A stretch of 63,753 nucleotides of DNA, filler included, from Octopus bimaculoides (lineage: Eukaryota): NCBI RefSeq assembly GCF_001194135.2. It is 4 parts of 4 records of this genome, joined end to end, with 100 filler letters (N's around TTAATTAATTAA, not from the genome) between each part and the next. Parts side by side here need not be neighbours in the genome. Positions count along the whole stretch, not along the records: positions 31,197 to 39,453 come from NC_068991.1; 3 more parts are not named here. One strand, given 5' to 3'. A program made the translations under genes and the position numbers. The stretch's first letter is position 1. Each line of letters starts with the position of its first letter. Positions 31,197 through 40,164 of the stretch are shown here, piece after piece. Under the pieces are notes generated by a model. The model was not told the origin of the DNA. It did not search any database and saw only the letters and a program-made list of their open reading frames with translations.

Positions 31197-31400
31197 CCTG
31201 GAGACAGTCTCTTTACGTGTTTAGCTGTCTCTCTCCATCTTTCGGACTTACACTCGACAGCTCGCTCACATCTACATAACAACGTCCCAACAACTATGCT
31301 CACACACATAGAAGCTGTAACAACAAGAGCTAAAGATGTATATATTTACCACCTGAATAAAATGTTGTTTAAGTTGATAGTCTGGAGTTCAGCGTTCCGT
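31197..31400 (+). mobile_element. Possible LTR remnant upstream of the Gypsy fragment
   Basis: Non-microsatellite segment with AATAAA near its 3' end, next to the pol fragment; left end lost in a gap. No second LTR is visible to confirm it. Confidence 0.3.
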
Positions 31401-31518
31401 TATATTCTTAATTTTATATAGGAAAGTCAGGTATACATCTAATGATGTATAACCCACTTTCCTATAGATACAATGAAACATATTTTAAAGAAGAGGATCC
31501 ACCATGTTAAGAACTTGA

Positions 31519-32010
31519 TGGGGGCTGCGCTCAATCGAGATCCGGATGGATTCGGCCACCGTGGTCGGCTGGGTAGGAACAGTGGTTACCAGTGAGAAGA
31601 GAGTCCGGACGAAAGGTGCCGCGGAGATGTTGGTGAAACGCCGCCTAGGAGTTCTGGGAGAGCTGATCGCCGAGTTCGGACTGAAGCTGAACGTGGTTTT
31701 TGTACCTTCGGAGAGAAACAGGGCGGACACACTGACCAGGGTGAAAAGGGCGTGTCGGCTGGGTGACTCCGAACTGAAGAAGCTACATGCTATGCACCAC
31801 TTGGGGGTGGATAGGACCCTGTATCTAGCGAAGATGATTGATGCTGACGTCACTAGGAGAAGCATCAAGAAAGTGGTCGGGAACTGTGACAGATGCCAGC
31901 CCATTGACCCCGACCCGGGTGGGCATGAGCAAGGGAACCTCTCAATAGAGCGAAACTGGAGGAGACTAGCTGTGGATGTGACGCACTACCGTCAGGGAAT
32001 GTATCTCACC
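31519..32010 (+). mobile_element. Ty3/Gypsy-like LTR retrotransposon pol fragment (RNase H C-terminus, HHCC zinc finger, start of integrase core)
   Basis: In-frame WGLRSIEIRMDSATV...SERNRADTLTR (RNase H end), LHAMHHLGVDRT...CDRC (integrase Zn finger), WRRLAVDVTHY (first catalytic Asp). RNaseH-then-integrase order fits Gypsy. GC-rich island, truncated at both ends. Confidence 0.85.
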
Positions 32011-32130
32011 AAGAAATATATTTTGTATTTTCAAGTTATATTTTTTATTAAAATACCTAGTTATATAAATAAATCGGTCAGTTATCTTAGTTTTTGCTGT
32101 TCTGTATTCATTTATCTATAACTGAAATAC

Positions 32131-32825
32131 TTGAGAAGACCCGGCAAGCCAAGTGAGACCAAAATCCAAGGCCTCTGCCAGGGGTGTAGCCAGCCCACTT
32201 ATGCGTACCTTTCCTTCATTGGACACTAAACTCCGCTTGCGAAGACCTGTTGAGTCAAGTGAAATCGAAATCGAACTAAATTCGATGACTGGCACCCATG
32301 CCAACGTCTCCTTCATTGGACACTAAACTCAGCTTGCAAAGACCTGTTGGGACAAGCGAAATCGTGATGGCACCTGTACCAGTGGAGCGCTAAGAGCACC
32401 GTTCAAGTGTGATCGTTGCCAGAGCAGCTGTCTGGCTTCCGTGCCAGTGACACGTAAATAGCACCATTTGAGCGTAATCGTTACCAGCGTCGCCTTGCTG
32501 GCACTTGTGCCGGTGGCACGTGAAAAGACATTCGAGCAAGATCGTTGCCAGTGCCGCTGGACTGGCTCCTGTGCAGGTGGCACGTAAAATACAGCATTTT
32601 GAGCGTGGCTGTTGCCAGTACCGCCTGACTGGCCTTCATGCCGGTGGCAATTAAAAGCACCCACTACACTCTCGGAGTGGTTGGCGTTGGGAAGGGCATC
32701 CAGCTGTTGAAACTCTGCCAGATCAGACTGGAGCCTAGTGCAGCCATCTGGTTCACCAGTCCTCAGTCAAATCGTCCAACCCATGCTAGCATGGAAAGCG
32801 GACGTTAAACGATGATGATGATGAT
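32131..32825 (+). mobile_element. Non-LTR retroposon fragment with RTE-like 3' tail
   Basis: GC-richer segment with an internal repeat (ccttcattggacactaaactc twice) ending cccatgctagcatggaaagcggacgttaaac(gat)n. A related inverted tail lies at about 37550-37650. RTE assignment is from recalled family features. Confidence 0.55.
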
Positions 32826-33351
32826 ATTTCAACAAGCCACGCAAGTCTGAAAAGCAGGCGTAAAATGATGATGATGATGAACAGCAACATAATTTTAATC
32901 TAATACAAGTAAACTTTCTCATGTTAGATAATAACAACAACAACGACAACAAACTTGAATTGTCCCTTATCACAAACAAGCGACCCGCAGTACACCTTAA
33001 AAAAAGTCTCCGACTGCTGTCATGAAAGCTTACAAGAAACTGAAATGGCACGTTAAACTCAAACATCACCTCCAGTTCTTATACGCAGGCTGCAGAAAAG
33101 AAATGCTTGTCTTACTAGCTGTGAGACTCACAAAAATAGAAATGAAAACATGAAAATTTCTCTTGTTCGTTATAAAGATGAAATTACTCATTAGCACGTG
33201 AGCTTACGATGCGCCGACCATCGGGAAATACATGTTGTGAGATGTTTATGTAGTTCTTACGCACCTTCGTTCGACAAACGTCAGAACTGTATAAATCTGT
33301 GTTGTGAAAAGCTGTGTCAGTCCTGGTTCCTGTTGAAATCTCAGTATATTA

Positions 33352-34546
33352 ATGATGTTATTGACAATTTTGGCAGGTGTAGCCATCACAATTATTTTAC
33401 CATTATCGATTCGCTACTATATGAAAGGAGCCACCTGCACCAGCCCTGTTAAACTGGAAGGCAAAACAGTTATTATTACTGGAGCTAACTGTGGAATTGG
33501 ATTCGAAACAGCCCGTAATTTATTACAACGAGGGGCTCGAGTGATCCTCGCATGTCGGGACGTAAATAAGGCAAAATCGGCTGCGAAACAATTAAGTGAA
33601 TTAGGTTCAGGTGTTGTACTTGTTGAAAAACTTGATCTCTCAAGCTTCGATTCCATCCGGACATTCTGCAAGAATATTAAGCAACATATAACCTCTTTGG
33701 ATATCCTTATAAACAATGCGGGTGTTTATTTCCACCCGTATGCTAAGACAGAGGATGGCCTGGAAATGCATATGGGGGTCAATTATTTTGGTCCTTTCCT
33801 TTTGACACATCTTCTACTGGAGTTATTTAAAAACTCTGATTCACCCCGCGTCATTTTTGTCGGGAGTATGCTTTACAAAAACGGGAAAATCGATTTTAAC
33901 AACATGAATAGACAGGAGTTTTTTCATCAACACGGTGCCTACTGTGACAGNNNNNNNNNNNNNNNNNNNNNNNNNNNNNNNNNNNNNNNNNNNNNNNNNN
34001 NNNNNNNNNNNNNNNNNNNNNNNNNNNNNNNNNNNNNNNNNNNNNNNNNNNNNNNNNNNNNNNNNNNNNNNNNNNNNNNNNNNNNNNNNNNNNNNNNNNN
34101 NNNNNNNNNNNNNNNNNNNNNNNNNNNNNNNNNNNNNNNNNNNNNNNNNNNNNNNNNNNNNNNNNNNNNNNNNNNNNNNNNNNNNNNNNNNNNNNNNNNN
34201 NNNNNNNNNNNNNNNNNNNNNNNNNNNNNNNNNNNNNNNNNNNNNNNNNNNNNNNNNNNNNNNNNNNNNNNNNNNNNNNNNNNNNNNNNNNNNNNNNNNN
34301 NNNNNNNNNNNNNNNNNNNNNNNNNNNNNNNNNNNNNNNNNNNNNNNNNNNNNNNNNNNNNNNNNNNNNNNNNNNNNNNNNNNNNNNNNNNNNNNNNNNN
34401 NNNNNNNNNNNNNNNNNNNNNNNAACCAATCTGGTTACTACTACAGTGAATGCCGGAGACACGAATGGGCAAAGCAGGCACTGGATAAACAACTTGCTAA
34501 AAAGTTGTGGAACTTCAGCGAAAAAGTTACTGGATTAACCGAATGA
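33352..34546 (+). CDS. Retinol dehydrogenase 11/12/13/14-like classical SDR, copy 1 (interrupted by assembly gap 33951-34423)
   Basis: ATG at 33352; hydrophobic N-terminal anchor; TGANCGIG (TGxxxGxG), ACRD (basic residue typical of NADP(H) preference), NNAG, GVNYFG, catalytic S172 and Y197 (AYCDS before the gap). After the gap, NQSGYYYSEC...KLWNFSEKVTGLTE* is identical to copy 2. Confidence 0.9.
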
Positions 34547-35809
34547 AAATCTTAACAATTGATCTCTCATCAAATTATAATGTAACGCTACCCTTCTTTT
34601 CTGTGGAATAATTAAAAAAAAATAATAACGAAAGAAGAAAGACCTCAGATGCAATTAATATAAAAATCTTGTTCGTCAGGAAATTAAAGAATTCGATAAC
34701 AGTTTAGTTTTTAAGAAATACTGATTCGATCTTGGAAGGTGTGAAGTATCATTCATTTAATACAACAGAACCCTTGCAGGGAACAAAGAAAGTATCTTGT
34801 ATTTTAACGTATGTTTCCTTTTCTGAATGAAATCAACGGCGACTTAATTGTTGATGTTACATGACGGTTATGGAAATATTTATTTGTTTGTTTATTATCG
34901 ATCATGATCAGTGATATTGGAATATCCAAGACTGGCTTTACTAATTGAATGAGAACATTTTCAAACCAAATATTTGACAGTCCGTGCTGAGGTAATGTTC
35001 ATACGAATGTGTTGAATTTTAACATCTTTCTAGTTGTTTTTGTTTCGTCGTGCTTTTAAGAAATCAGAATTTTCTGTATTTAATTAGTATAAAGAAAAGC
35101 ATTCCTGCCGGGACCAAAAGCTAAGCCTAATAACTCTTAACGAATCATACGTTTCGGTAATTGTATTAAATGCAGTTAAATACTGCCGAATGAAGAAAAG
35201 GCAAACCTAAATGTGACCGTCAAGTATTTGTTTTGAAAAGTTTTCGTGTTGGACTTTAAATCCAGGAGTCTCTGATTTATTTAATGAGGGTTCCGCGTAG
35301 GAAGATCACTGATCCCAAATTGTAACACAAATATATGGTTTAATGAACATCATTTTCAAAACTTTCTTACACGACTTTGGAAGTTAGGTATAACAGTTTT
35401 TAGNNNNNNNNNNNNNNNNNNNNNNNNNNNNNNNNNNNNNNNNNNNNNNNNNNNNNNNNNNNNNNNNNNNNNNNNNNNNNNNNNNNNNNNNNNNNNNNNN
35501 NNNNNNNNNNNNNNNNNNNNNNNNNNNNNNNNNNNNNNNNNNNNNNNNNNNNNAATATCGTGTCTATATGGTTTTATACCATGTCGTTCTATATGATGTG
35601 TGTATTATTACGATGGAATTCAGTTGTTGAAATGTTTCAAGCTCGGATTCAGTATCTTAAATTTGCTATGTTCCAGGGCAAAAATACAAAATCAATTACC
35701 TTAGAAATTTCAATCGACTTTTTATTCTGCCAATAAAATCCTTTTTTTTTTTTAAACGATGGTATTTTCTAAGTGTCTTTTTATGAAAGGCATACCTTTC
35801 ATCTTTTAC

Positions 35810-36190
35810 TTGAGTGAGTCATTGGACTCTGGCCATGCTGGGGCACTACCCTCAAGGATAGAGTTGAACAAATCAACCTACACACTTATTTATTTTTTTG
35901 TGCCTGGTACTTATTCTATCAGTTTCTTTTGCCATATTGTTAAGTTATGGAGAAGTAAACAAACCAACACTGGTTGTTAAGAGATGGGCAGAAACAAATA
36001 CAATGGTACACTTGCACACGCATATATGACAGGCTTCCACACAGTTTCTGTCTGCCAAATACCTTCACAGGCATAGCTTGGCCTGAGGCTATAGTAGAAG
36101 ACAATAGCCCAAAGTACCGTGCCATGCGACTGAACCTGAAACCGCGAGGTTACAAACCAAGCTTCTTAACTATACAGCCATACCTGCACC
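35810..36190 (-). mobile_element. SINE family B, minus strand, between the SDR copies
   Basis: ggccatgctggggcac...tacttattctatcagtttc...aagcttcttaactatacagccat. Confidence 0.65.
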
Positions 36191-36644
36191 TAATTGTATA
36201 TGACTTGTAAATAATGATTTCTGAAATAAGAGCGAACTTTTAGAGGAAGAAAAGAACTGAATTCATTGATTAATATATATTTGACTGACAGTGGAAAAAG
36301 GAAAAGCTAAGTCAACTTTGGTAGGGTATGAACTGGCAAATTACCATATATTCAGGCAAATAAGGTGCACCTCCATTTTGGCAGGCCTGACCTGTGGAGG
36401 AGAAAAAAACTGCACCTGACCCCGAATTGCCAAGCTGAATATCTCACATTTTCATGTATAGGAACACTGAAAATTTAAACTGATGCCCTTTCGGTGAGCT
36501 ATTGTGGTAGGTTAAGTTCCAATACTTACCTTAACACAATCGAATTTCACCTCTGTCCTCCACTGTCACCTGTATTGTCTATTAATAACAGGAACCAAGT
36601 CTACTCAGAGCCTGACCTTCAGTATGTAAGGTGCAGGGGTTCTT

Positions 36645-36974
36645 TTGGAATGTATTTTGGAGGGAAAATATGTGCCAAATATGTCCAGTGCCAATACATC
36701 CAATTCGATACCAGACTTGGATGAAGATGAGATTTTTCAGCATGACGGAGCTCCATGCCACAGATTGCATGCAACACAACAGAGTCTGGCTGATGAAGGT
36801 GTTACCGTATTGAAAAATTGGCCAATTCAAAGCCCTGATTTAAATATCATCTAGTAAATTTGGACAGAACTAAAGAGAACAGTTTGTCAGAAGAATCCAC
36901 GCAATTCGTACGCGTCTCTTCCCAGGCGCATTGAAACAATTATTGAGGCTAAGGGAAGCCACACAAAATGTTAA
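36645..36974 (+). mobile_element. Tc1-family DDE transposase C-terminal remnant (pseudogenised)
   Basis: IFQHDGAPCH...WPIQSPDLNII* then IWTELKR...SLPRRIETIIEAKGSHTKC*, matching Tc1 motifs FQQDNAPCH, WPxQSPDLNPIE and MPRR...KGGHTKY. Catalytic Glu position is TAG; internal deletion after KNPRNS. TIR-like end gatttgtacggtactgta near 37278-37295. Confidence 0.85.
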
Positions 36975-37740
36975 CAATGTACAGTAACTTCTTAAAACGA
37001 ACATTATGTAATAAATTTTCATTATAGACATTTTTCTGTTTGAAAACGCTGTATCTTGATTGGTTTATGTGAGGCAGCCCCAAATTGTTGCACGGTCATT
37101 TTTGGTTGTCGTCTCACATCTTTCCGTTTCATTCAGAACACCTACTACAAAATATAAAGATTGAGTATGGACACGGCTCCAGCAGGGCCAATGTTTTAAA
37201 CTATAAAAATCACAATACGAAACATCCACTTATAAGTTGGCTATTAGTAGAAATTTACAGTAGTCTAAAGTGACTGAGATTTGTACGGTACTGTATTATA
37301 GTGGTTGAATAAATATAGATCGATAAAATGAGTACTAGACTGAAATGAATACTGGGGTTGAACTGCTTAACTTAAATTTATTGATATGTTACTGTAGCTT
37401 ACTTCCAATGATTGAAGTTAGTAAAAAAGTTCTGATACATAGTACAAGAAATTTACTTTTGGTACATAACCATATTATATACATTAGCCGCACACTCTTA
37501 AATATACCTTAATATAGTAAATTAATACTTGTATTTATTTGAAGTACATTTATTCTCCACGCTTGCATGGGTCAGACAGAATTTGTTGAGGCAGATTTTC
37601 TATAGCTGAATAGTCTTCCTTTTGTCAACCCTCACCTGTTTCTAAGTGAGGTAATGAAAAGCAGGCGTATGATGATGATGATGCTGAACAACATAATTTT
37701 TATCTAATACAATTAAACTTTCTCATGTTCAATAATAACA

Positions 37741-37883
37741 TGAAGAAGTCTCCCTTCCATACACATGCAAGCATGTATCTGACTCATACACTGTTCACTT
37801 TCCAGATATTTGTACAATACTACATATGCTTTATACGCACTTTTGACAAGTTGTAGTGCACCTGAGCACTGTATACAATAATT

Positions 37884-37915
<32 letters not shown>
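37741..37915 (+). mobile_element. 5'-truncated LINE 3' end inserted upstream of SDR copy 2
   Basis: About 175 bp absent from the homologous position upstream of copy 1; ends in (ATT)n; flanked by ATAACA at 37735-37740 and 37916-37921 (candidate TSD). Confidence 0.65.
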
Positions 37916-37918
<3 letters not shown>

Positions 37919-38342
37919 ACAACAAACTTGAATTGTCCCCTATCACAAACAAGCGGGCCTCAGTACACTGTAAAAAAAAAGTCTCCGACTGCTGTCAAGC
38001 ACGCTGGTAGCAAATAAATTACGAGAAACCTAAATGTTAAACCCAAACATCGCCTGCAGTTCTTATGCGCAGGCTGCGGAAAATAAATGCTTGTCCTTCC
38101 AGCTGAGTGTGAGATTCAGAAAAATGGAGATGAAAATATTTAAATTTGTCTTGTTCATTATAAAGATGAACTTACACGTTTCCACGTGAGCTTACTTACA
38201 ATGCGCCGATTGTGAAGAAGTACATGTTGTGAGATCATTATGTAGTTCTCACGCACCTTTGTACTATAAACGTCAGAACTGTAAAATCTGTGCCGTGAAA
38301 AGGTGTGTTAGTCCTAGTTTCTATCGAAATCTCAGTATATTA

Positions 38343-39290
38343 ATGATGTTGTTGACAATTTTGGCAGGTGTAGCCATAACAATTATTTTACCATTATCGA
38401 TTCGCTACTATATGAAAGGAGCCACCTGCACCAGCCCTGTTAAACTGGAAGGCAAAACAGTTATTGTTACTGGAGCTAACTGTGGAATCGGATTCGAAAC
38501 AGCCCGTAATTTATTACAACGAGGGGCTCGAGTGATCCTCGCATGTCGGGACGTAAATAAGGCAAAATCGGCTGCGAAACAATTAAGTGAATTAGGTTCA
38601 GGTGTTGTACTTGTTGAAAAACTTGATCTCTCAAGCTTCGATTCCATCCGGACATTCTGCAAGAATATTAAACAACATATAACCTCTTTGGATATCCTTA
38701 TAAACAACGCGGGTGTTTATTTCCACCCGTATGCTAAGACAGAGGATGGCCTAGAAATGCATATGGGGGTCAATTATTTTGGTCCTTTCCTTTTGACACA
38801 TCTTCTACTGGAGTTATTAAAAAAGTCTGATTCACCCCGCGTCATTTTTGTTGGGAGTGCGATTTACAAATACGGGAAAATCGATTTTAACAACACGAAC
38901 AGACAAACGTTTTACCAAAAACACAGTGCCTACAGTGACAGTAAGTTAGCATGTGCTTTATTTTGCCGTGAATTTCGCAATCGAATGTCAAACACTAATA
39001 TCAACATATATTATGTTCACCCAGGTGTAGTTAATACAGATATAAGTAGAAACCTTTTAAATTCATCTCTTTTGAAATCACTGGTCGATGTTTTCAAATT
39101 ACTTATAAAGAATTGCCAAGAAGGTTGTCAAACTGTTATATATTGTGCTGTTAGTGAAGAGACGAAAAACCAATCTGGTTACTACTACAGTGAATGCCGG
39201 AGACACGAATGGGCAAAGCAGGCACTGGATAAACAACTTGCTAAAAAGTTGTGGAACTTCAGCGAAAAAGTTACTGGATTAACCGAATGA
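38343..39290 (+). CDS. Retinol dehydrogenase 11/12/13/14-like classical SDR, copy 2, complete single-exon ORF of 315 aa
   Basis: Uninterrupted ORF from ATG 38343 (the track's 38229 start is a GTG). Motifs TGANCGIG, ACRD, LDLSSFDSIR, NNAG, catalytic N144/S172/YSDSK, HPGVVNT, EGCQTVIYCA, SGYYYSEC and AKKLWNFSE are characteristic of the RDH12-like SDR clade. The specific orthologue cannot be assigned by eye. Confidence 0.95.
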   Translation: MMLLTILAGVAITIILPLSIRYYMKGATCTSPVKLEGKTVIVTGANCGIGFETARNLLQRGARVILACRDVNKAKSAAKQLSELGSGVVLVEKLDLSSFDSIRTFCKNIKQHITSLDILINNAGVYFHPYAKTEDGLEMHMGVNYFGPFLLTHLLLELLKKSDSPRVIFVGSAIYKYGKIDFNNTNRQTFYQKHSAYSDSKLACALFCREFRNRMSNTNINIYYVHPGVVNTDISRNLLNSSLLKSLVDVFKLLIKNCQEGCQTVIYCAVSEETKNQSGYYYSECRRHEWAKQALDKQLAKKLWNFSEKVTGLTE

Positions 39291-40164
39291 AAATCTTAAC
39301 AATTGTTCTCTCAACAAATTATTTCTGTGGAATAATTAAAAAATAATAATAACGAAAGAAGAAAGACCTTATACTTCTCGGATGCAATTAATATAAAAAT
39401 TTTGTTCATCAGGAAATTAAAGAAATTCGATAACAGTTTAGTTTTTAAGAATTNNNNNNNNNNNNNNNNNNNNNNNNNNNNNNNNNNNNNNNNNNNNTTA
39501 ATTAATTAANNNNNNNNNNNNNNNNNNNNNNNNNNNNNNNNNNNNNNNNNNNNGTATGTATAGGTGTGTCGATACAAATTTTACAATACATTGGTGAATA
39601 TATACTGTTCATGAGCATTTAAACATCTGCCTGTATTTAAAATTTGAAACTGATATTTTTTCTTTTTTTTTTTTTTAAATATACTTCTAGTTCCTTGTCT
39701 TTATATAATTTCTTTCATTCTCTCGCAGACATTGAAACAAAGAATATTTTCTGGGCTTCCTTCCTTTTTCTATATTTTAGTCAATTTGGAAATAAATGAT
39801 TGAAATTAAACAATTGCAGAAGCTAAAAACAAAGAAAATATAATAATAATAATAATAATAATAATTAAAAAATGCGGATCAATAAATTTCTGTTCTTTAA
39901 CTTAATTGAATTTAGCAAATATAATTAACATTGTAATTAAAATGGGATGTATGAAAGTAAAAAGTTCAGTGGATGGTGATTGGAAGGAAACTCAAACGTT
40001 TGAAATTAATCATATCCGGCAAATTTGGTCATGCAAATTTGGTTCATTCAATTTCATAGGAAGAAATCATCTGTACAACACAATTGCAGAGTTCTTCAGA
40101 TTTTTTATATTCATGTTTTTTGCATTTACACTGTCTTCTTCTTCTTTTGCTATACATACTCATG

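What the first reader, a model, noticed from the sequence alone, without database searches (positions are those of the whole stretch)
33826..38936. Tandem SDR paralogs identical almost everywhere except the active-site segment: conversion-homogenised scaffold with a diversified substrate loop
Hand alignment of the two CDSs. Codons 1-158 (474 nt) have 7 substitutions, 6 synonymous and 1 replacement (I42V). Codons 159-198 (120 nt; 33826-33945 vs 38817-38936) have 18 substitutions giving 12 amino-acid changes (F159L, N161K, M173A, L174I, N177Y, M185T, E189T, F191Y, H192Q, Q193K, G195S, C198S) and only 3 purely synonymous changes. The last 123 nt are identical. Upstream non-coding DNA differs by roughly 15-20% by eye. 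Ten of the 12 changes fall between catalytic S172 and the YxxxK motif, a segment that helps shape the substrate pocket in classical SDRs (established). Inference: an older duplication whose Rossmann fold and C-terminus were homogenised by gene conversion while the substrate-facing segment escaped, possibly under diversifying selection, giving two enzymes with the same cofactor handling but different substrates (retinoid isomers, other aldehydes or steroids). A link to cephalopod retinoid or visual chemistry is speculation. Counts are small, so relaxed constraint cannot be separated from positive selection here.
Basis: partly seen in the sequence, partly recalled or inferred. Interest (0 to 1): 0.8.

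Follow-up and report, generated by a model that had tools for sequence, protein, structure and literature searches.

The report
Octopus dehydrogenase twins kept alike
Two neighbouring retinol-dehydrogenase-like genes of the octopus Octopus bimaculoides are an old gene pair that keeps being copied onto itself (gene conversion), except for a 40-base stretch next to the catalytic tyrosine that has stayed different since before this octopus split from Octopus vulgaris; this is a clean new example of a well-known process.

Summary

**Gaps.** RNA contigs bridge both assembly gaps. Gap 1 is really 226 nt, in frame, with 1-3 differences from copy B. Gap 2 is really 140 nt.

**Paralogs, not alleles.** Six O. 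bimaculoides individuals and a sister species carry both block versions, about 1:1. Separate full-length mRNA contigs confirm the phasing of each copy.

**Gene conversion.** O. vulgaris has an intact orthologue of each copy.
- In CDS nt 54-502 and 826-941, all 24 informative sites group the paralogs by species.
- In nt 554-583, all 7 informative sites group them by paralog type (Fisher p = 4e-7).
- The promoters also group by paralog type (13:1).
- So this is an old pair homogenised independently in each species.

**The block is composite.**
- Codons 185-198 are an ancient unconverted core covering the loop and the start of helix αF, which carries Y197.
- F159, N161, M173, L174 and N177 are changes private to copy A; F159 and N161 are absent from the sister species' copy A.

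**Selection is not shown.** Core dN/dS is about 0.4, the loop is variable across the family, and the canonical substrate lid is identical in the two copies.

This is a new member of a known kind, of modest interest.

The parts
33352..34546 (+). Copy A: intronless RDH11-14-like SDR gene (315 codons plus stop; 226 nt of it hidden in gap 33951-34423). It corresponds to XP_014786541.1 'retinol dehydrogenase 12-like' of Octopus bimaculoides.
   Evidence: ORF and translation. P0001 matches the visible parts. RNA contigs X1 and X2 run through it and bridge the gap.
38343..39290 (+). Copy B: intact intronless paralogue, 315 codons plus stop. Motifs: TGANCGIG at 43, NNAG at 121, catalytic N144, S172, Y197, K201.
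   Evidence: Pfam adh_short E = 3.7e-37. Full-length B mRNA contigs X26 (1175 nt, 1 difference) and X29.
33826..33945 (+). It carries 18 nt and 12 aa differences from B 38817-38936.
   Evidence: It forms a separate 176-nt unitig at single-copy depth in six individuals.
38817..38936 (+).
   Evidence: B-specific 176-nt unitig 38789-38964 in DNA and RNA runs.
33905..33943 (+). Ancient unconverted core of copy A (CDS nt 554-592, codons 185-198). It carries the A-type, ancestral states that are also held by the O. vulgaris A orthologue, a third octopod and largely Argonauta.
   Evidence: All 7 paralog-type informative sites lie at 554-583, plus the three-state site 592. A-type cores differ by only 3-4 of 41 nt among three species.
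38896..38934 (+). Ancient core of copy B. Its derived states M185T, E189T, H192Q, Q193K, G195S and C198S are shared in kind with O. vulgaris B and arose before the species split.
   Evidence: B orthologues differ at 8/41, A versus B at 11-16/41. Tandem multi-nucleotide changes at 564-566 and 576-577.
33828..33880 (+). Cluster of replacements private to copy A, around catalytic S172: F159, N161, M173, L174, N177. F159 and N161 hit residues that are invariant or nearly invariant in the family. They are absent from the sister species' copy A.
   Evidence: 5 singletons in 79 nt versus 2 in 474 nt, p = 9e-4. L159 is found in 20/20 and K161 in 15/20 other family members. X20 shows 33828 T>A and 33834 C>G.
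33388..33827 (+). Homogenised 5' coding segment of A (partner: B 38379-38818). It has 5 differences, and its informative sites group the copies by species.
   Evidence: It collapses into one double-depth contig in DNA graphs.
33944..34561 (+). Homogenised 3' coding segment plus the first 15 nt of the 3'UTR of A (partner: B 38935-39305). It has 0-3 differences, and contains gap 1, whose true length is 226 nt.
   Evidence: A double-depth contig of 455 nt spans it in X11.
33951..34423 (.). Assembly gap 1: 473 N standing for 226 real bases. The flanks are continuous and in frame.
   Evidence: Joints in RNA contigs X1 and X2: 'skips 473, 226 letters between'.
35404..35553 (.). Assembly gap 2, in copy A's 3'UTR: 150 N standing for 140 real bases. 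The flanks are continuous and colinear with both O. vulgaris loci.
   Evidence: Joints in RNA contigs X2 and X6. Colinearity with L001 and L002.
32848..33387 (+). Promoter, 5'UTR and first 12 codons of copy A. This part is unconverted and is orthologous to the O. vulgaris A locus (L002).
   Evidence: 13 paralog-type sites against 1 species-type site at 32939-33235. RNA contigs start at 33185-33295.
37655..38378 (+). Promoter and 5'UTR of copy B, with a repeat insertion at about 37741-37918. This part is unconverted and is orthologous to the O. vulgaris B locus (L001).
   Evidence: B mRNA contigs start at 38214-38283.
34547..35731 (+). 3'UTR of copy A. The proximal part 34562-35053 is diverged from B (88%, single-copy depth). 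The distal part from 35054 on is identical to B's (double depth).
   Evidence: X2 mRNA contig ends at 35731. Depths are 32-34 against 50-60 in X11. Alignment.
39291..39453 (+). Start of copy B's 3'UTR, cut off by the end of the piece.
   Evidence: B-type 3'UTR contigs in X26-X29. Continuation seen in L007.

Best explanation
The window holds two head-to-tail, intronless genes of Octopus bimaculoides (chromosome CM046611.1). Their start codons are about 4.7 kb apart once the gap lengths are corrected.

**The enzymes.** They encode membrane-anchored classical short-chain dehydrogenases of the RDH11/12/13/14-like group. An NADP(H)-type cofactor site is inferred.

**An old pair.** Each copy has its own orthologue in O. 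vulgaris, and the promoters are diverged and orthology-consistent.

**Homogenisation.** Interlocus gene conversion has repeatedly overwritten most of the coding region and parts of the 3'UTR, independently in each species.

1. A 39-nt core, CDS nt 554-592 (codons 185-198).
   - It covers the end of the family-specific loop between catalytic S172 and Y197, plus the first turn and a half of helix αF.
   - It has not been converted since before the species split.
   - Copy A keeps the ancestral version. The B lineage acquired M185T, E189T, H192Q, Q193K, G195S/N and C198S/G.
2. Five amino-acid replacements private to copy A: F159, N161, M173, L174 and N177.

**Expression.** Both genes are transcribed with their own UTRs, at different ratios in different samples.

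**Shown:** the paralogy, the conversion mosaic, the age of the core, the expression and the continuity across the gaps.

**Inferred:** the enzyme class from motifs and fold. It is not settled why the core persists. Selection against converted alleles and a conversion barrier in a low-constraint, mismatch-dense loop are about equally likely.
For:
- The clustering of differences gives a permutation p <= 1e-5.
- RNA contigs bridge the gaps: 226 nt for gap 1 and 140 nt for gap 2.
- Both block unitigs are present at about 1:1, each about half the depth of the shared flanks and equal to the unique intergenic depth. This holds in X7, X10, X11, X12, X15 and X17.
- Both blocks are also present in a sister species, X20.
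- Phased full-length transcripts exist for A (X2, 33247-35731) and for B (X26, 38214-39388, 1 difference).
- O. vulgaris has intact 315-codon orthologues at L001 and L002.
- Four-taxon site patterns: 24 species-type sites at nt 54-502 and 826-941 against 7 paralog-type sites at 554-583, Fisher p = 3.8e-7. Eleven of the 24 species-type sites are synonymous.
- The 3'UTR at 34424-34720 has 15 species-type and 0 paralog-type sites. The promoter has 13 paralog-type and 1 species-type.
- Derived states shared by both copies occur in each species, so conversion happened after the split in both lineages.
- A runs test for the O. vulgaris pair gives p = 1.5e-4.
- Downstream of B is syntenic with the O. 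vulgaris B locus.
- Pfam adh_short hit and the sequence motifs.
- AF2 model with pLDDT 90.7 and its secondary structure.
- Closest solved folds are LPOR and 3rd5.
- Different RNA runs hold the A block and the B block.
Against: - The runs test for the O. bimaculoides pair alone, with the gap excluded, is not significant (p = 0.11).
- All read evidence comes from short de Bruijn contigs. No long read shows A and B on one molecule.
  - The tandem order rests on an ungapped assembly contig (35554-39453) that begins in sequence shared by both copies.
  - It also rests on synteny of B's downstream flank.
- RNA contigs of X14 and X6 join A-type 5' and proximal 3'UTR variants to a B-type block. This is most simply graph chimerism, but polymorphic conversion tracts are not excluded.
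- The O. vulgaris orthologues are on different chromosomes. That requires either inter-chromosomal conversion there or an assembly or relocation issue.
- Nothing here measures enzyme activity.
Confidence: 0.85

Rival explanations
1. Selection keeps the core apart. The two versions of the loop/αF-start (codons 185-198) give the enzymes different properties, so alleles in which conversion erases the difference are removed. The copy-A-private changes around S172 are adaptive fine-tuning.
For: - The core has stayed paralog-specific in O. bimaculoides, its sister species and O. vulgaris while both flanks were converted after the split.
- The A-type core is strongly conserved across three species, 3-4 differences in 41 nt.
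- The B stem carries about 7 replacement changes against 1 silent change.
- Copy A has 5 replacement and 0 clearly silent private changes within 53 nt next to the catalytic serine.
- The two genes are expressed in different samples from diverged promoters.
Against: - Core dN/dS is below 1 (0.27/0.72 and 0.46/0.61).
- Residues 187-196 and 198 are the most variable in the family.
- Several changes are tandem multi-nucleotide events (564-566, 576-577), which inflate apparent replacement bursts.
- The unconverted part of O. vulgaris is about 310 nt, so its overlap with the 116-nt remnant here is not improbable by chance or common inheritance.
- F159 and N161 replace invariant or nearly invariant residues, which fits relaxed constraint as well as adaptation.
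- The canonical substrate lid is identical in A and B.
Confidence: 0.4
2. Neutral remnant. The core is simply the piece that conversion tracts have not yet crossed. It lies in a low-constraint loop, and its mismatch density (27-37%) itself blocks heteroduplex formation, so tracts stop at its edges. No functional difference is implied.
For: - The mosaic is patchy and differs between species. O. vulgaris also keeps nt ~517-830 unconverted, and O. bimaculoides keeps the proximal 3'UTR unconverted.
- The block's edges differ in the sister species, where the unitigs are 156 nt rather than 176 nt.
- Synonymous divergence in the core is as high as replacement divergence.
- The loop is variable across the family.
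Against: - The A-type core is well conserved among three species, so the loop is not unconstrained in that copy.
- The remnant has persisted through repeated conversions on both sides in at least three species.
Confidence: 0.45
3. Artefact. The two 'copies' are haplotypes or a chimeric assembly around the gaps, and the block next to the gap is a mis-join.
For: - The block abuts an assembly gap.
- The assembly is short-read based.
- The shared parts collapse in de Bruijn graphs.
Against: - Six individuals and a sister species all carry both versions at equal, single-copy depth.
- The intergenic DNA has the same depth as each block.
- Homology between the units has defined ends.
- Independent mRNA contigs reproduce each copy end to end.
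- O. vulgaris has both types as separate intact genes.
Confidence: 0.02
4. A recent duplication without gene conversion, followed by a local burst of mutation or positive selection in the block.
For: The coding flanks are almost identical.
Against: - Promoters differ by 14-16% and group with their O. vulgaris orthologues.
- The core states are shared with O. vulgaris by paralog type.
- Paralog divergence in the 3' coding part (0%) is lower than the species divergence (8%).
Confidence: 0.03

Closest known systems
Interlocus gene conversion with mosaic divergence in duplicated genes. Examples from my own knowledge: primate L/M opsins, RHD/RHCE, and the Teshima-Innan conversion-selection models. 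In the held library: 'Interlocus gene conversion causes mosaic divergence in tandem paralogues' (bioRxiv 10.1101/2025.10.29.685298) and conversion in Caenorhabditis paralogs (PMC3966223); both appear in the listing.
   Same: - Paralogs group by species over most of their length but by paralog type in a short segment.
- Silent and UTR sites are homogenised too.
- Tract boundaries differ between lineages.
- The promoters stay distinct.
   Different: - This is a new locus and a new taxon: a cephalopod SDR pair.
- In O. vulgaris the partners are on different chromosomes.
- Unlike the opsin case, no functional role of the surviving segment is known.
Vertebrate RDH11/RDH12/RDH13/RDH14 (SDR7C), microsomal or mitochondrial NADPH-dependent retinal and aldehyde reductases.
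   Same: - 45-49% identity over the full length.
- adh_short domain.
- TGxxxGIG, NNAG and the N-S-Y-K tetrad.
- N-terminal hydrophobic helix.
- 25-residue Ser-to-Tyr spacing.
   Different: - The octopod genes are intronless (also in Argonauta).
- They form a lineage-specific clade. The nearest non-octopod hit is 52% identical, from Lottia.
- Substrate and cofactor are untested, and no RDH11-14 structure was found among the PDB hits.
Light-dependent protochlorophyllide oxidoreductase (LPOR; 7jk9, 6r48, 6l1g) and the mycobacterial SDR 3rd5, the closest solved structures.
   Same: - Same fold, TM-score 0.74-0.80.
- 3rd5 aligns through the Ser-Tyr insertion without length change.
   Different: - Only 28-31% identity.
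- LPOR has a longer, non-alignable insertion at this place and a different substrate and mechanism.
- There is no basis here for transferring function.

Membership tests
Classical SDR (Pfam adh_short, PF00106) | Significant match to the family profile above the curated cut-off | tested here: met
   128.1 bits against a cut-off of 26.6, E = 3.7e-37, residues 38-238.
Classical SDR (Pfam adh_short, PF00106) | Glycine-rich cofactor motif TGxxxGxG and the NNAG motif | tested here: met
   TGANCGIG at 43-50 and NNAG at 121-124 in both copies. Both are invariant in the family alignment.
Classical SDR (Pfam adh_short, PF00106) | Catalytic tetrad Asn-Ser-Tyr-Lys | tested here: met
   N144, S172, Y197 and K201 in copy B. 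Copy A shows N144, S172 and Y197 in the window; K201 lies in the gap and is present in P0001 and in the bridging RNA contigs.
RDH11-14-like subgroup (SDR7C) | Closest full-length relatives are RDH11/12/13/14-type proteins, with the extended Ser-Tyr spacing | tested here: met
   The top 120 hits that carry a source name are almost all named retinol dehydrogenase 11/12/13/14(-like), at 43-52% identity and 90-100% coverage. The S172-Y197 spacing of 25 residues is conserved in the alignment.
RDH11-14-like subgroup (SDR7C) | NADPH-dependent reduction of retinal or other aldehydes | not testable with these tools
The names in databases are predictions.
RDH11-14-like subgroup (SDR7C) | N-terminal membrane anchor | tested here: inconclusive
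   The AF2 model has a hydrophobic helix at residues 2-25. No membrane-topology predictor was run.
Interlocus gene conversion (concerted evolution) between paralogs | Paralogs within a species are more alike than orthologues between species, including at silent and non-coding sites | tested here: met
   - 5' CDS: 7 and 14 differences within species against 23-29 between species.
- 3' CDS: 0 and 3 against 10.
- 24 species-type informative sites, 11 of them synonymous.
- 15 species-type sites at 34424-34720, spanning the end of the CDS and the start of the 3'UTR.
Interlocus gene conversion (concerted evolution) between paralogs | Evidence that the duplication predates the species split, meaning similarity is not just youth | tested here: met
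   - 7 paralog-type sites in the core.
- 13 paralog-type against 1 species-type in the promoter.
- Synteny of B with L001.
- Both blocks present in the sister species.
Interlocus gene conversion (concerted evolution) between paralogs | Statistically non-random mosaic of identical and diverged tracts | tested here: met
   - Window permutation p <= 1e-5.
- Partition of the site patterns p = 3.8e-7.
- Runs test p = 1.5e-4 for the O. vulgaris pair, but p = 0.11 for the O. bimaculoides pair with the gap excluded.
Conversion-selection balance (segment kept apart by selection) | Excess of replacement change, or a functional difference mapped to the unconverted segment | tested here: not met
   Core dN/dS is 0.37 and 0.75, both below 1. 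The segment is variable across the family. Function was not assayed. This row tests the strong claim only and does not exclude it.

The most novel reading that the evidence does not exclude
A 14-codon loop next to the catalytic tyrosine is held apart by selection in a conversion-selection balance. That balance has lasted across at least three octopus species, and in O. vulgaris it operates between different chromosomes. The B-type loop marks a neofunctionalised reductase with a separately regulated promoter, while copy A of O. bimaculoides is now shifting again around the catalytic serine.
Probability: 0.35. Interest if true: 0.5.

Novelty: new member of a known kind. Interest (0 to 1): 0.33.

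Why it matters
- It is a compact, well-controlled natural example of how gene conversion and divergence partition a small enzyme gene. It has orthologues, outgroups, several individuals and transcripts to back it.
- The surviving differences point to a defined, testable set of residues next to the active site: 185-198, plus 159, 161, 173, 174 and 177.
- It has a practical lesson. The assembly gaps, the truncated and fused gene models in O. bimaculoides and the mis-spliced model in O. vulgaris all stem from the paralogs being identical over hundreds of bases. Trees built from whole-gene alignments of this family would wrongly date the duplication as species-specific.
- It does not open a new kind of biology.

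Tried and rejected
1. First alignment with a wrong offset. Corrected to +4991.
2. Allelic or misassembly explanation. Rejected from depths in six individuals, a sister species and phased mRNA contigs.
3. Scaffold misjoin at gap 2. Rejected because both sides are colinear with both O. vulgaris loci and RNA contigs bridge the gap.
4. RNA- or cDNA-templated conversion limited to the transcribed region.
   - Considered because the switch from paralog-type to species-type sites (33219 to 33235) lies near the RNA contig starts.
   - Set aside because the 5'UTR and first 12 codons (33258-33387) are still diverged between A and B, and near-identity runs past the mRNA end.
5. A third paralogue as donor of the copy-A-private changes. 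No third block variant was seen at 93% or more likeness, and the protein search found only A and B above 90% identity in O. bimaculoides. A more distant donor is not excluded.
6. Raw 2026 RNA-seq reads (X42, X43, X52) at 100% likeness, to phase the block with flanking SNPs. No reads were laid, so the gene was not sampled.
7. The look-up of encoding contigs for P0001: not on record.
It was repeated with A2.
9. Mapping the 12 sites onto a pocket. Only secondary structure and confidence are returned, so contacts could not be measured.
10. Pfam scans of the two transposon-like ORFs gave no hit at E <= 0.01.
11. Literature search for this gene pair or for octopus RDH gene conversion found nothing specific.

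Full report
**What is there.**
- The piece (31197-39453) holds two intronless ORFs on the + strand. Copy A is 33352-34546, interrupted by the N-run 33951-34423. Copy B is 38343-39290, 315 codons plus stop.
- Copy B matches Pfam adh_short (E = 3.7e-37). It carries TGANCGIG (43-50), NNAG (121-124) and the catalytic N144, S172, Y197 and K201.
- The protein search identifies the organism and the family. The best hit, P0001, is XP_014786541.1 'retinol dehydrogenase 12-like' of Octopus bimaculoides and equals copy A. More distant hits that carry a name are mostly RDH11/12/13/14-like proteins at 43-52% identity.
- The window equals GCA_001194135.2 chromosome CM046611.1, with locus L007 plus 28342 giving window coordinates.

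**Check of the observation.**
There are 7 differences in nt 1-474 (6 silent plus I42V), 18 differences in nt 475-594 with the 12 listed amino-acid changes, and none in the last 123 nt.
- Eighteen of 26 differences fall in one 120-nt window. This was never reached in 100,000 permutations.
- Upstream DNA is homologous from 32848/37655 at about 89% with indels.

**Gaps, tested first.**
- RNA-derived contigs of two runs (X1, 1178 nt; X2, 2228 nt) join 33950 to 34424 with exactly 226 letters between them. That is the length of the corresponding part of copy B (38942-39167). Copy A is therefore 948 nt, continuous and in frame, and the 473 N overestimate the gap.
- Laid on copy B, these A-type transcripts differ in that stretch only at 38991 (N217D) and at 39105/39110. 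All three sites vary among runs.
- In DNA graphs the A-specific unitig runs from 33798 to 23 nt past 33950. That is what k = 31 predicts if the copies become identical right after 33943, so the gap is a collapse of identical paralogous sequence.
- The second gap (35404-35553) lies in copy A's 3'UTR. RNA contigs bridge it with 140 letters, and both sides are colinear with the O. vulgaris loci.

**Paralogs, not alleles or a chimera.**
- In six O. bimaculoides DNA runs from different samples (X7, X10, X11, X12, X15, X17), both 176-nt block unitigs are present at about equal depth.
- Each is about half the depth of the collapsed flanks and equal to the unique intergenic DNA. In X11, for example, A is 31.5, B is 32.1, intergenic is 31.6-34 and shared is 52-54.
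- A sister species (X20) also has both.
- Full-length mRNA contigs reproduce each copy with its own UTRs: A in X2 (33247-35731) and B in X26 (38214-39388, one difference) and X29.
- The tandem order follows from two things. The ungapped assembly contig 35554-39453 links a unit tail to B's promoter. B's own tail is followed by DNA syntenic with the O. vulgaris B locus. No long read confirms the order.

**Cross-species test.**
- O. vulgaris has two intact 315-codon orthologues, at L001 (B-like, chromosome OX597824.1) and L002 (A-like, OX597827.1). The 213-aa database protein P0005 is a mis-spliced model.
- Differences per region:

| Region | Within O. bimaculoides | Within O. vulgaris | Between species |
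|---|---|---|---|
| 5' CDS (474 nt) | 7 | 14 | 23-29 |
| Last 123 nt | 0 | 3 | 10 |
| Block (120 nt), paralogs | 18 | 18 | |
| Block (120 nt), orthologues | | | 12 |

- Site patterns are clean. All 24 informative sites at nt 54-502 and 826-941 group by species. All 7 at nt 554-583 group by paralog type, and site 592 agrees with them. Fisher p = 3.8e-7, and 11 of the 24 species-type sites are silent.
- Outside the CDS, the promoter (32939-33219) gives 13 paralog-type sites against 1 species-type site. The stretch 34424-34720, which covers the end of the CDS and the start of the 3'UTR, gives 15 species-type and none paralog-type.
- With a third octopod (L003) and Argonauta (L006) as outgroups, states derived and shared by both copies occur in each species: 7 in O. 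bimaculoides and 14 in O. vulgaris. Conversion therefore acted after the split in both lineages.
- This is the standard signature of interlocus gene conversion on an old duplicate pair.

**Anatomy of the block.** It has two layers.
1. The core, nt 554-592 (codons 185-198; A 33905-33943, B 38896-38934).
   - It is the only coding segment with demonstrable pre-speciation divergence.
   - A-type cores differ by 3-4 of 41 nt among three species. B orthologues differ at 8 of 41, and A versus B at 11-16 of 41.
   - The outgroups carry A-type states, so the B lineage acquired M185T, E189T, H192Q, Q193K, G195S/N and C198S/G. Part of this came through tandem multi-nucleotide changes at 564-566 and 576-577.
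2. The changes at codons 159, 161, 173, 174 and 177.
   - They are private to O. bimaculoides copy A: 5 singletons in 79 nt against 2 in 474 nt, p = 9e-4.
   - F159 replaces a residue invariant in 20 of 20 other family members, and N161 one found in 15 of 20.
   - The sister species' copy A still has L159 and K161.
   - The block unitigs of the sister species are 156 nt instead of 176 nt, so the block's edges differ even between close relatives.

**Structure.**
- An AlphaFold2 model (pLDDT 90.7) has an N-terminal helix at 2-25, strand β5 at 166-170, a short helix at 173-177, a loop at 178-192 and helix αF at 193-214, which carries Y197 and K201.
- The core is therefore the end of the family-specific Ser-Tyr insertion loop plus the start of αF.
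- The classical SDR substrate lid (β6-αG, about 229-258, low confidence) is identical at the protein level in O. bimaculoides A and B. It is strongly diverged between the O. vulgaris paralogs, 32 differences in 231 nt.
- The closest solved folds are LPOR (TM 0.80) and the mycobacterial SDR 3rd5. No RDH11-14 structure was found. Residue contacts could not be measured with the tools at hand.

**Selection or not.**
- dN/dS between A and B, with the O. vulgaris pair for the core:

| Codons | Pair | dN | dS |
|---|---|---|---|
| 1-158 | A vs B | 0.003 | 0.056 |
| 159-184 | A vs B | 0.10 | 0.07 |
| 185-198 (core) | A vs B | 0.27 | 0.72 |
| 185-198 (core) | O. vulgaris pair | 0.46 | 0.61 |

- The core thus looks old rather than merely fast at replacement sites.
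- It lies in the most variable stretch of the family.
- O. vulgaris keeps about 310 nt unconverted, so the overlap of the remnants is not by itself improbable.
- Conservation of the A-type core, and persistence of the difference in three species, are compatible with selection against converted alleles.
- I rate selection (0.4) and a neutral remnant or mismatch barrier (0.45) as about equally likely.

**Expression.**
- Different RNA runs hold the two blocks. X1 and X2 hold only A. In X28, B is far above A (89 against 12). X27 and X6 hold both.
- This fits the diverged promoters. Tissue names were not available.
- One oddity remains. Contigs of X14 and X6 join A-type 5' and proximal 3'UTR variants to a B-type block. 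Graph chimerism through the identical stretches is the simplest reading, but polymorphic conversion tracts are possible.

**Comparison with what is known.**
- The mechanism is ordinary interlocus gene conversion with a mosaic of converted and unconverted tracts. It has been described for many duplicate pairs: L/M opsins and RHD/RHCE from my own knowledge, and bioRxiv 10.1101/2025.10.29.685298 and PMC3966223 in the listing.
- No paper on this octopus pair turned up.
- The genes are members of the RDH11-14-like SDR group by sequence features. Their enzymatic activity is untested.

**Verdict.**
- The gene-conversion reading is supported.
- The 'diversified substrate loop under selection' reading is not shown.
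- This is a new member of a known kind, of modest interest.

Noticed in passing
L001 9932-10879 (O. vulgaris OX597824.1) and L002 10001-10948 (OX597827.1): The orthologues of the two tandem O. bimaculoides genes sit on different chromosomes in the O. vulgaris assembly. Even so, they share species-specific substitutions over about 2.2 kb of a 2.7-kb unit. This means either inter-chromosomal gene conversion, or a relocation or assembly issue.
   Followed up: partly
L007 14415-19094 versus L001 1-6600: DNA lying upstream of the B-like gene in O. vulgaris is found inverted downstream of copy B in O. bimaculoides. This is either an inversion between the species or a scaffold orientation error (there are gaps nearby).
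   Followed up: no
P0005 / L002; P0122 and P0123 / window 33352-39290: Gene models are damaged by the paralogy. The O. vulgaris A-like gene is annotated as a 213-aa protein spliced to distant exons, although an intact 315-codon ORF is present. O. bimaculoides copy A is annotated as a 199-aa fragment. A 504-aa UniProt entry in the same cluster is too long for either gene.
   Followed up: partly
window 35919-36418: A 501-nt insertion in the tail of unit A is absent from the otherwise 92-98% identical tail of unit B (L007 12117-12650). DNA contigs of three individuals show the uninterrupted form as a joint 35917->36419.
   Followed up: partly
window 35660-36260, 37460-37860, 37885-37917: Very high-copy repeats, with contig word depth from 5,000 up to above 1,000,000. 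They include an (ATT)n microsatellite just upstream of unit B, and a repeat insertion (~37741-37918) that splits B's upstream homology.
   Followed up: no
window 36645-36960: A remnant ORF whose motifs (HDGAPCH ... NWPIQSPDLNII) look, from memory, like the C-terminal part of a Tc1/mariner transposase. It gave no Pfam hit at E <= 0.01.
   Followed up: partly
window 31546-32020 and 32370-32830: An ORF with a His/Cys pattern reminiscent of a retroelement integrase zinc finger (no Pfam hit). It is followed by a SINE-like element with internal repeats that has dozens of copies in the O. vulgaris loci.
   Followed up: no
window 38900, 38991, 39105, 39110, 33891: Polymorphic sites inside or next to the block. 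Many of the other DNA and RNA runs carry T (the copy A state) where the reference copy B has C at 38900. 38991 A/G changes N217D, and G is the state of all other octopods examined.
   Followed up: partly
window 38286-38934 and 34600-35403 as seen in run X14 (also X6): RNA contigs combine A-type 5' variants, a B-type block, an A-type proximal 3'UTR and a B-type distal 3'UTR. This is either assembly-graph chimerism through identical stretches or conversion tracts that are polymorphic among animals.
   Followed up: partly
L006 10001-10945 (Argonauta hians), L003 799-1746: The whole octopod clade of this SDR is intronless, including the single Argonauta gene, which is 65% identical. This suggests an old retrogene origin for the family.
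   Followed up: no
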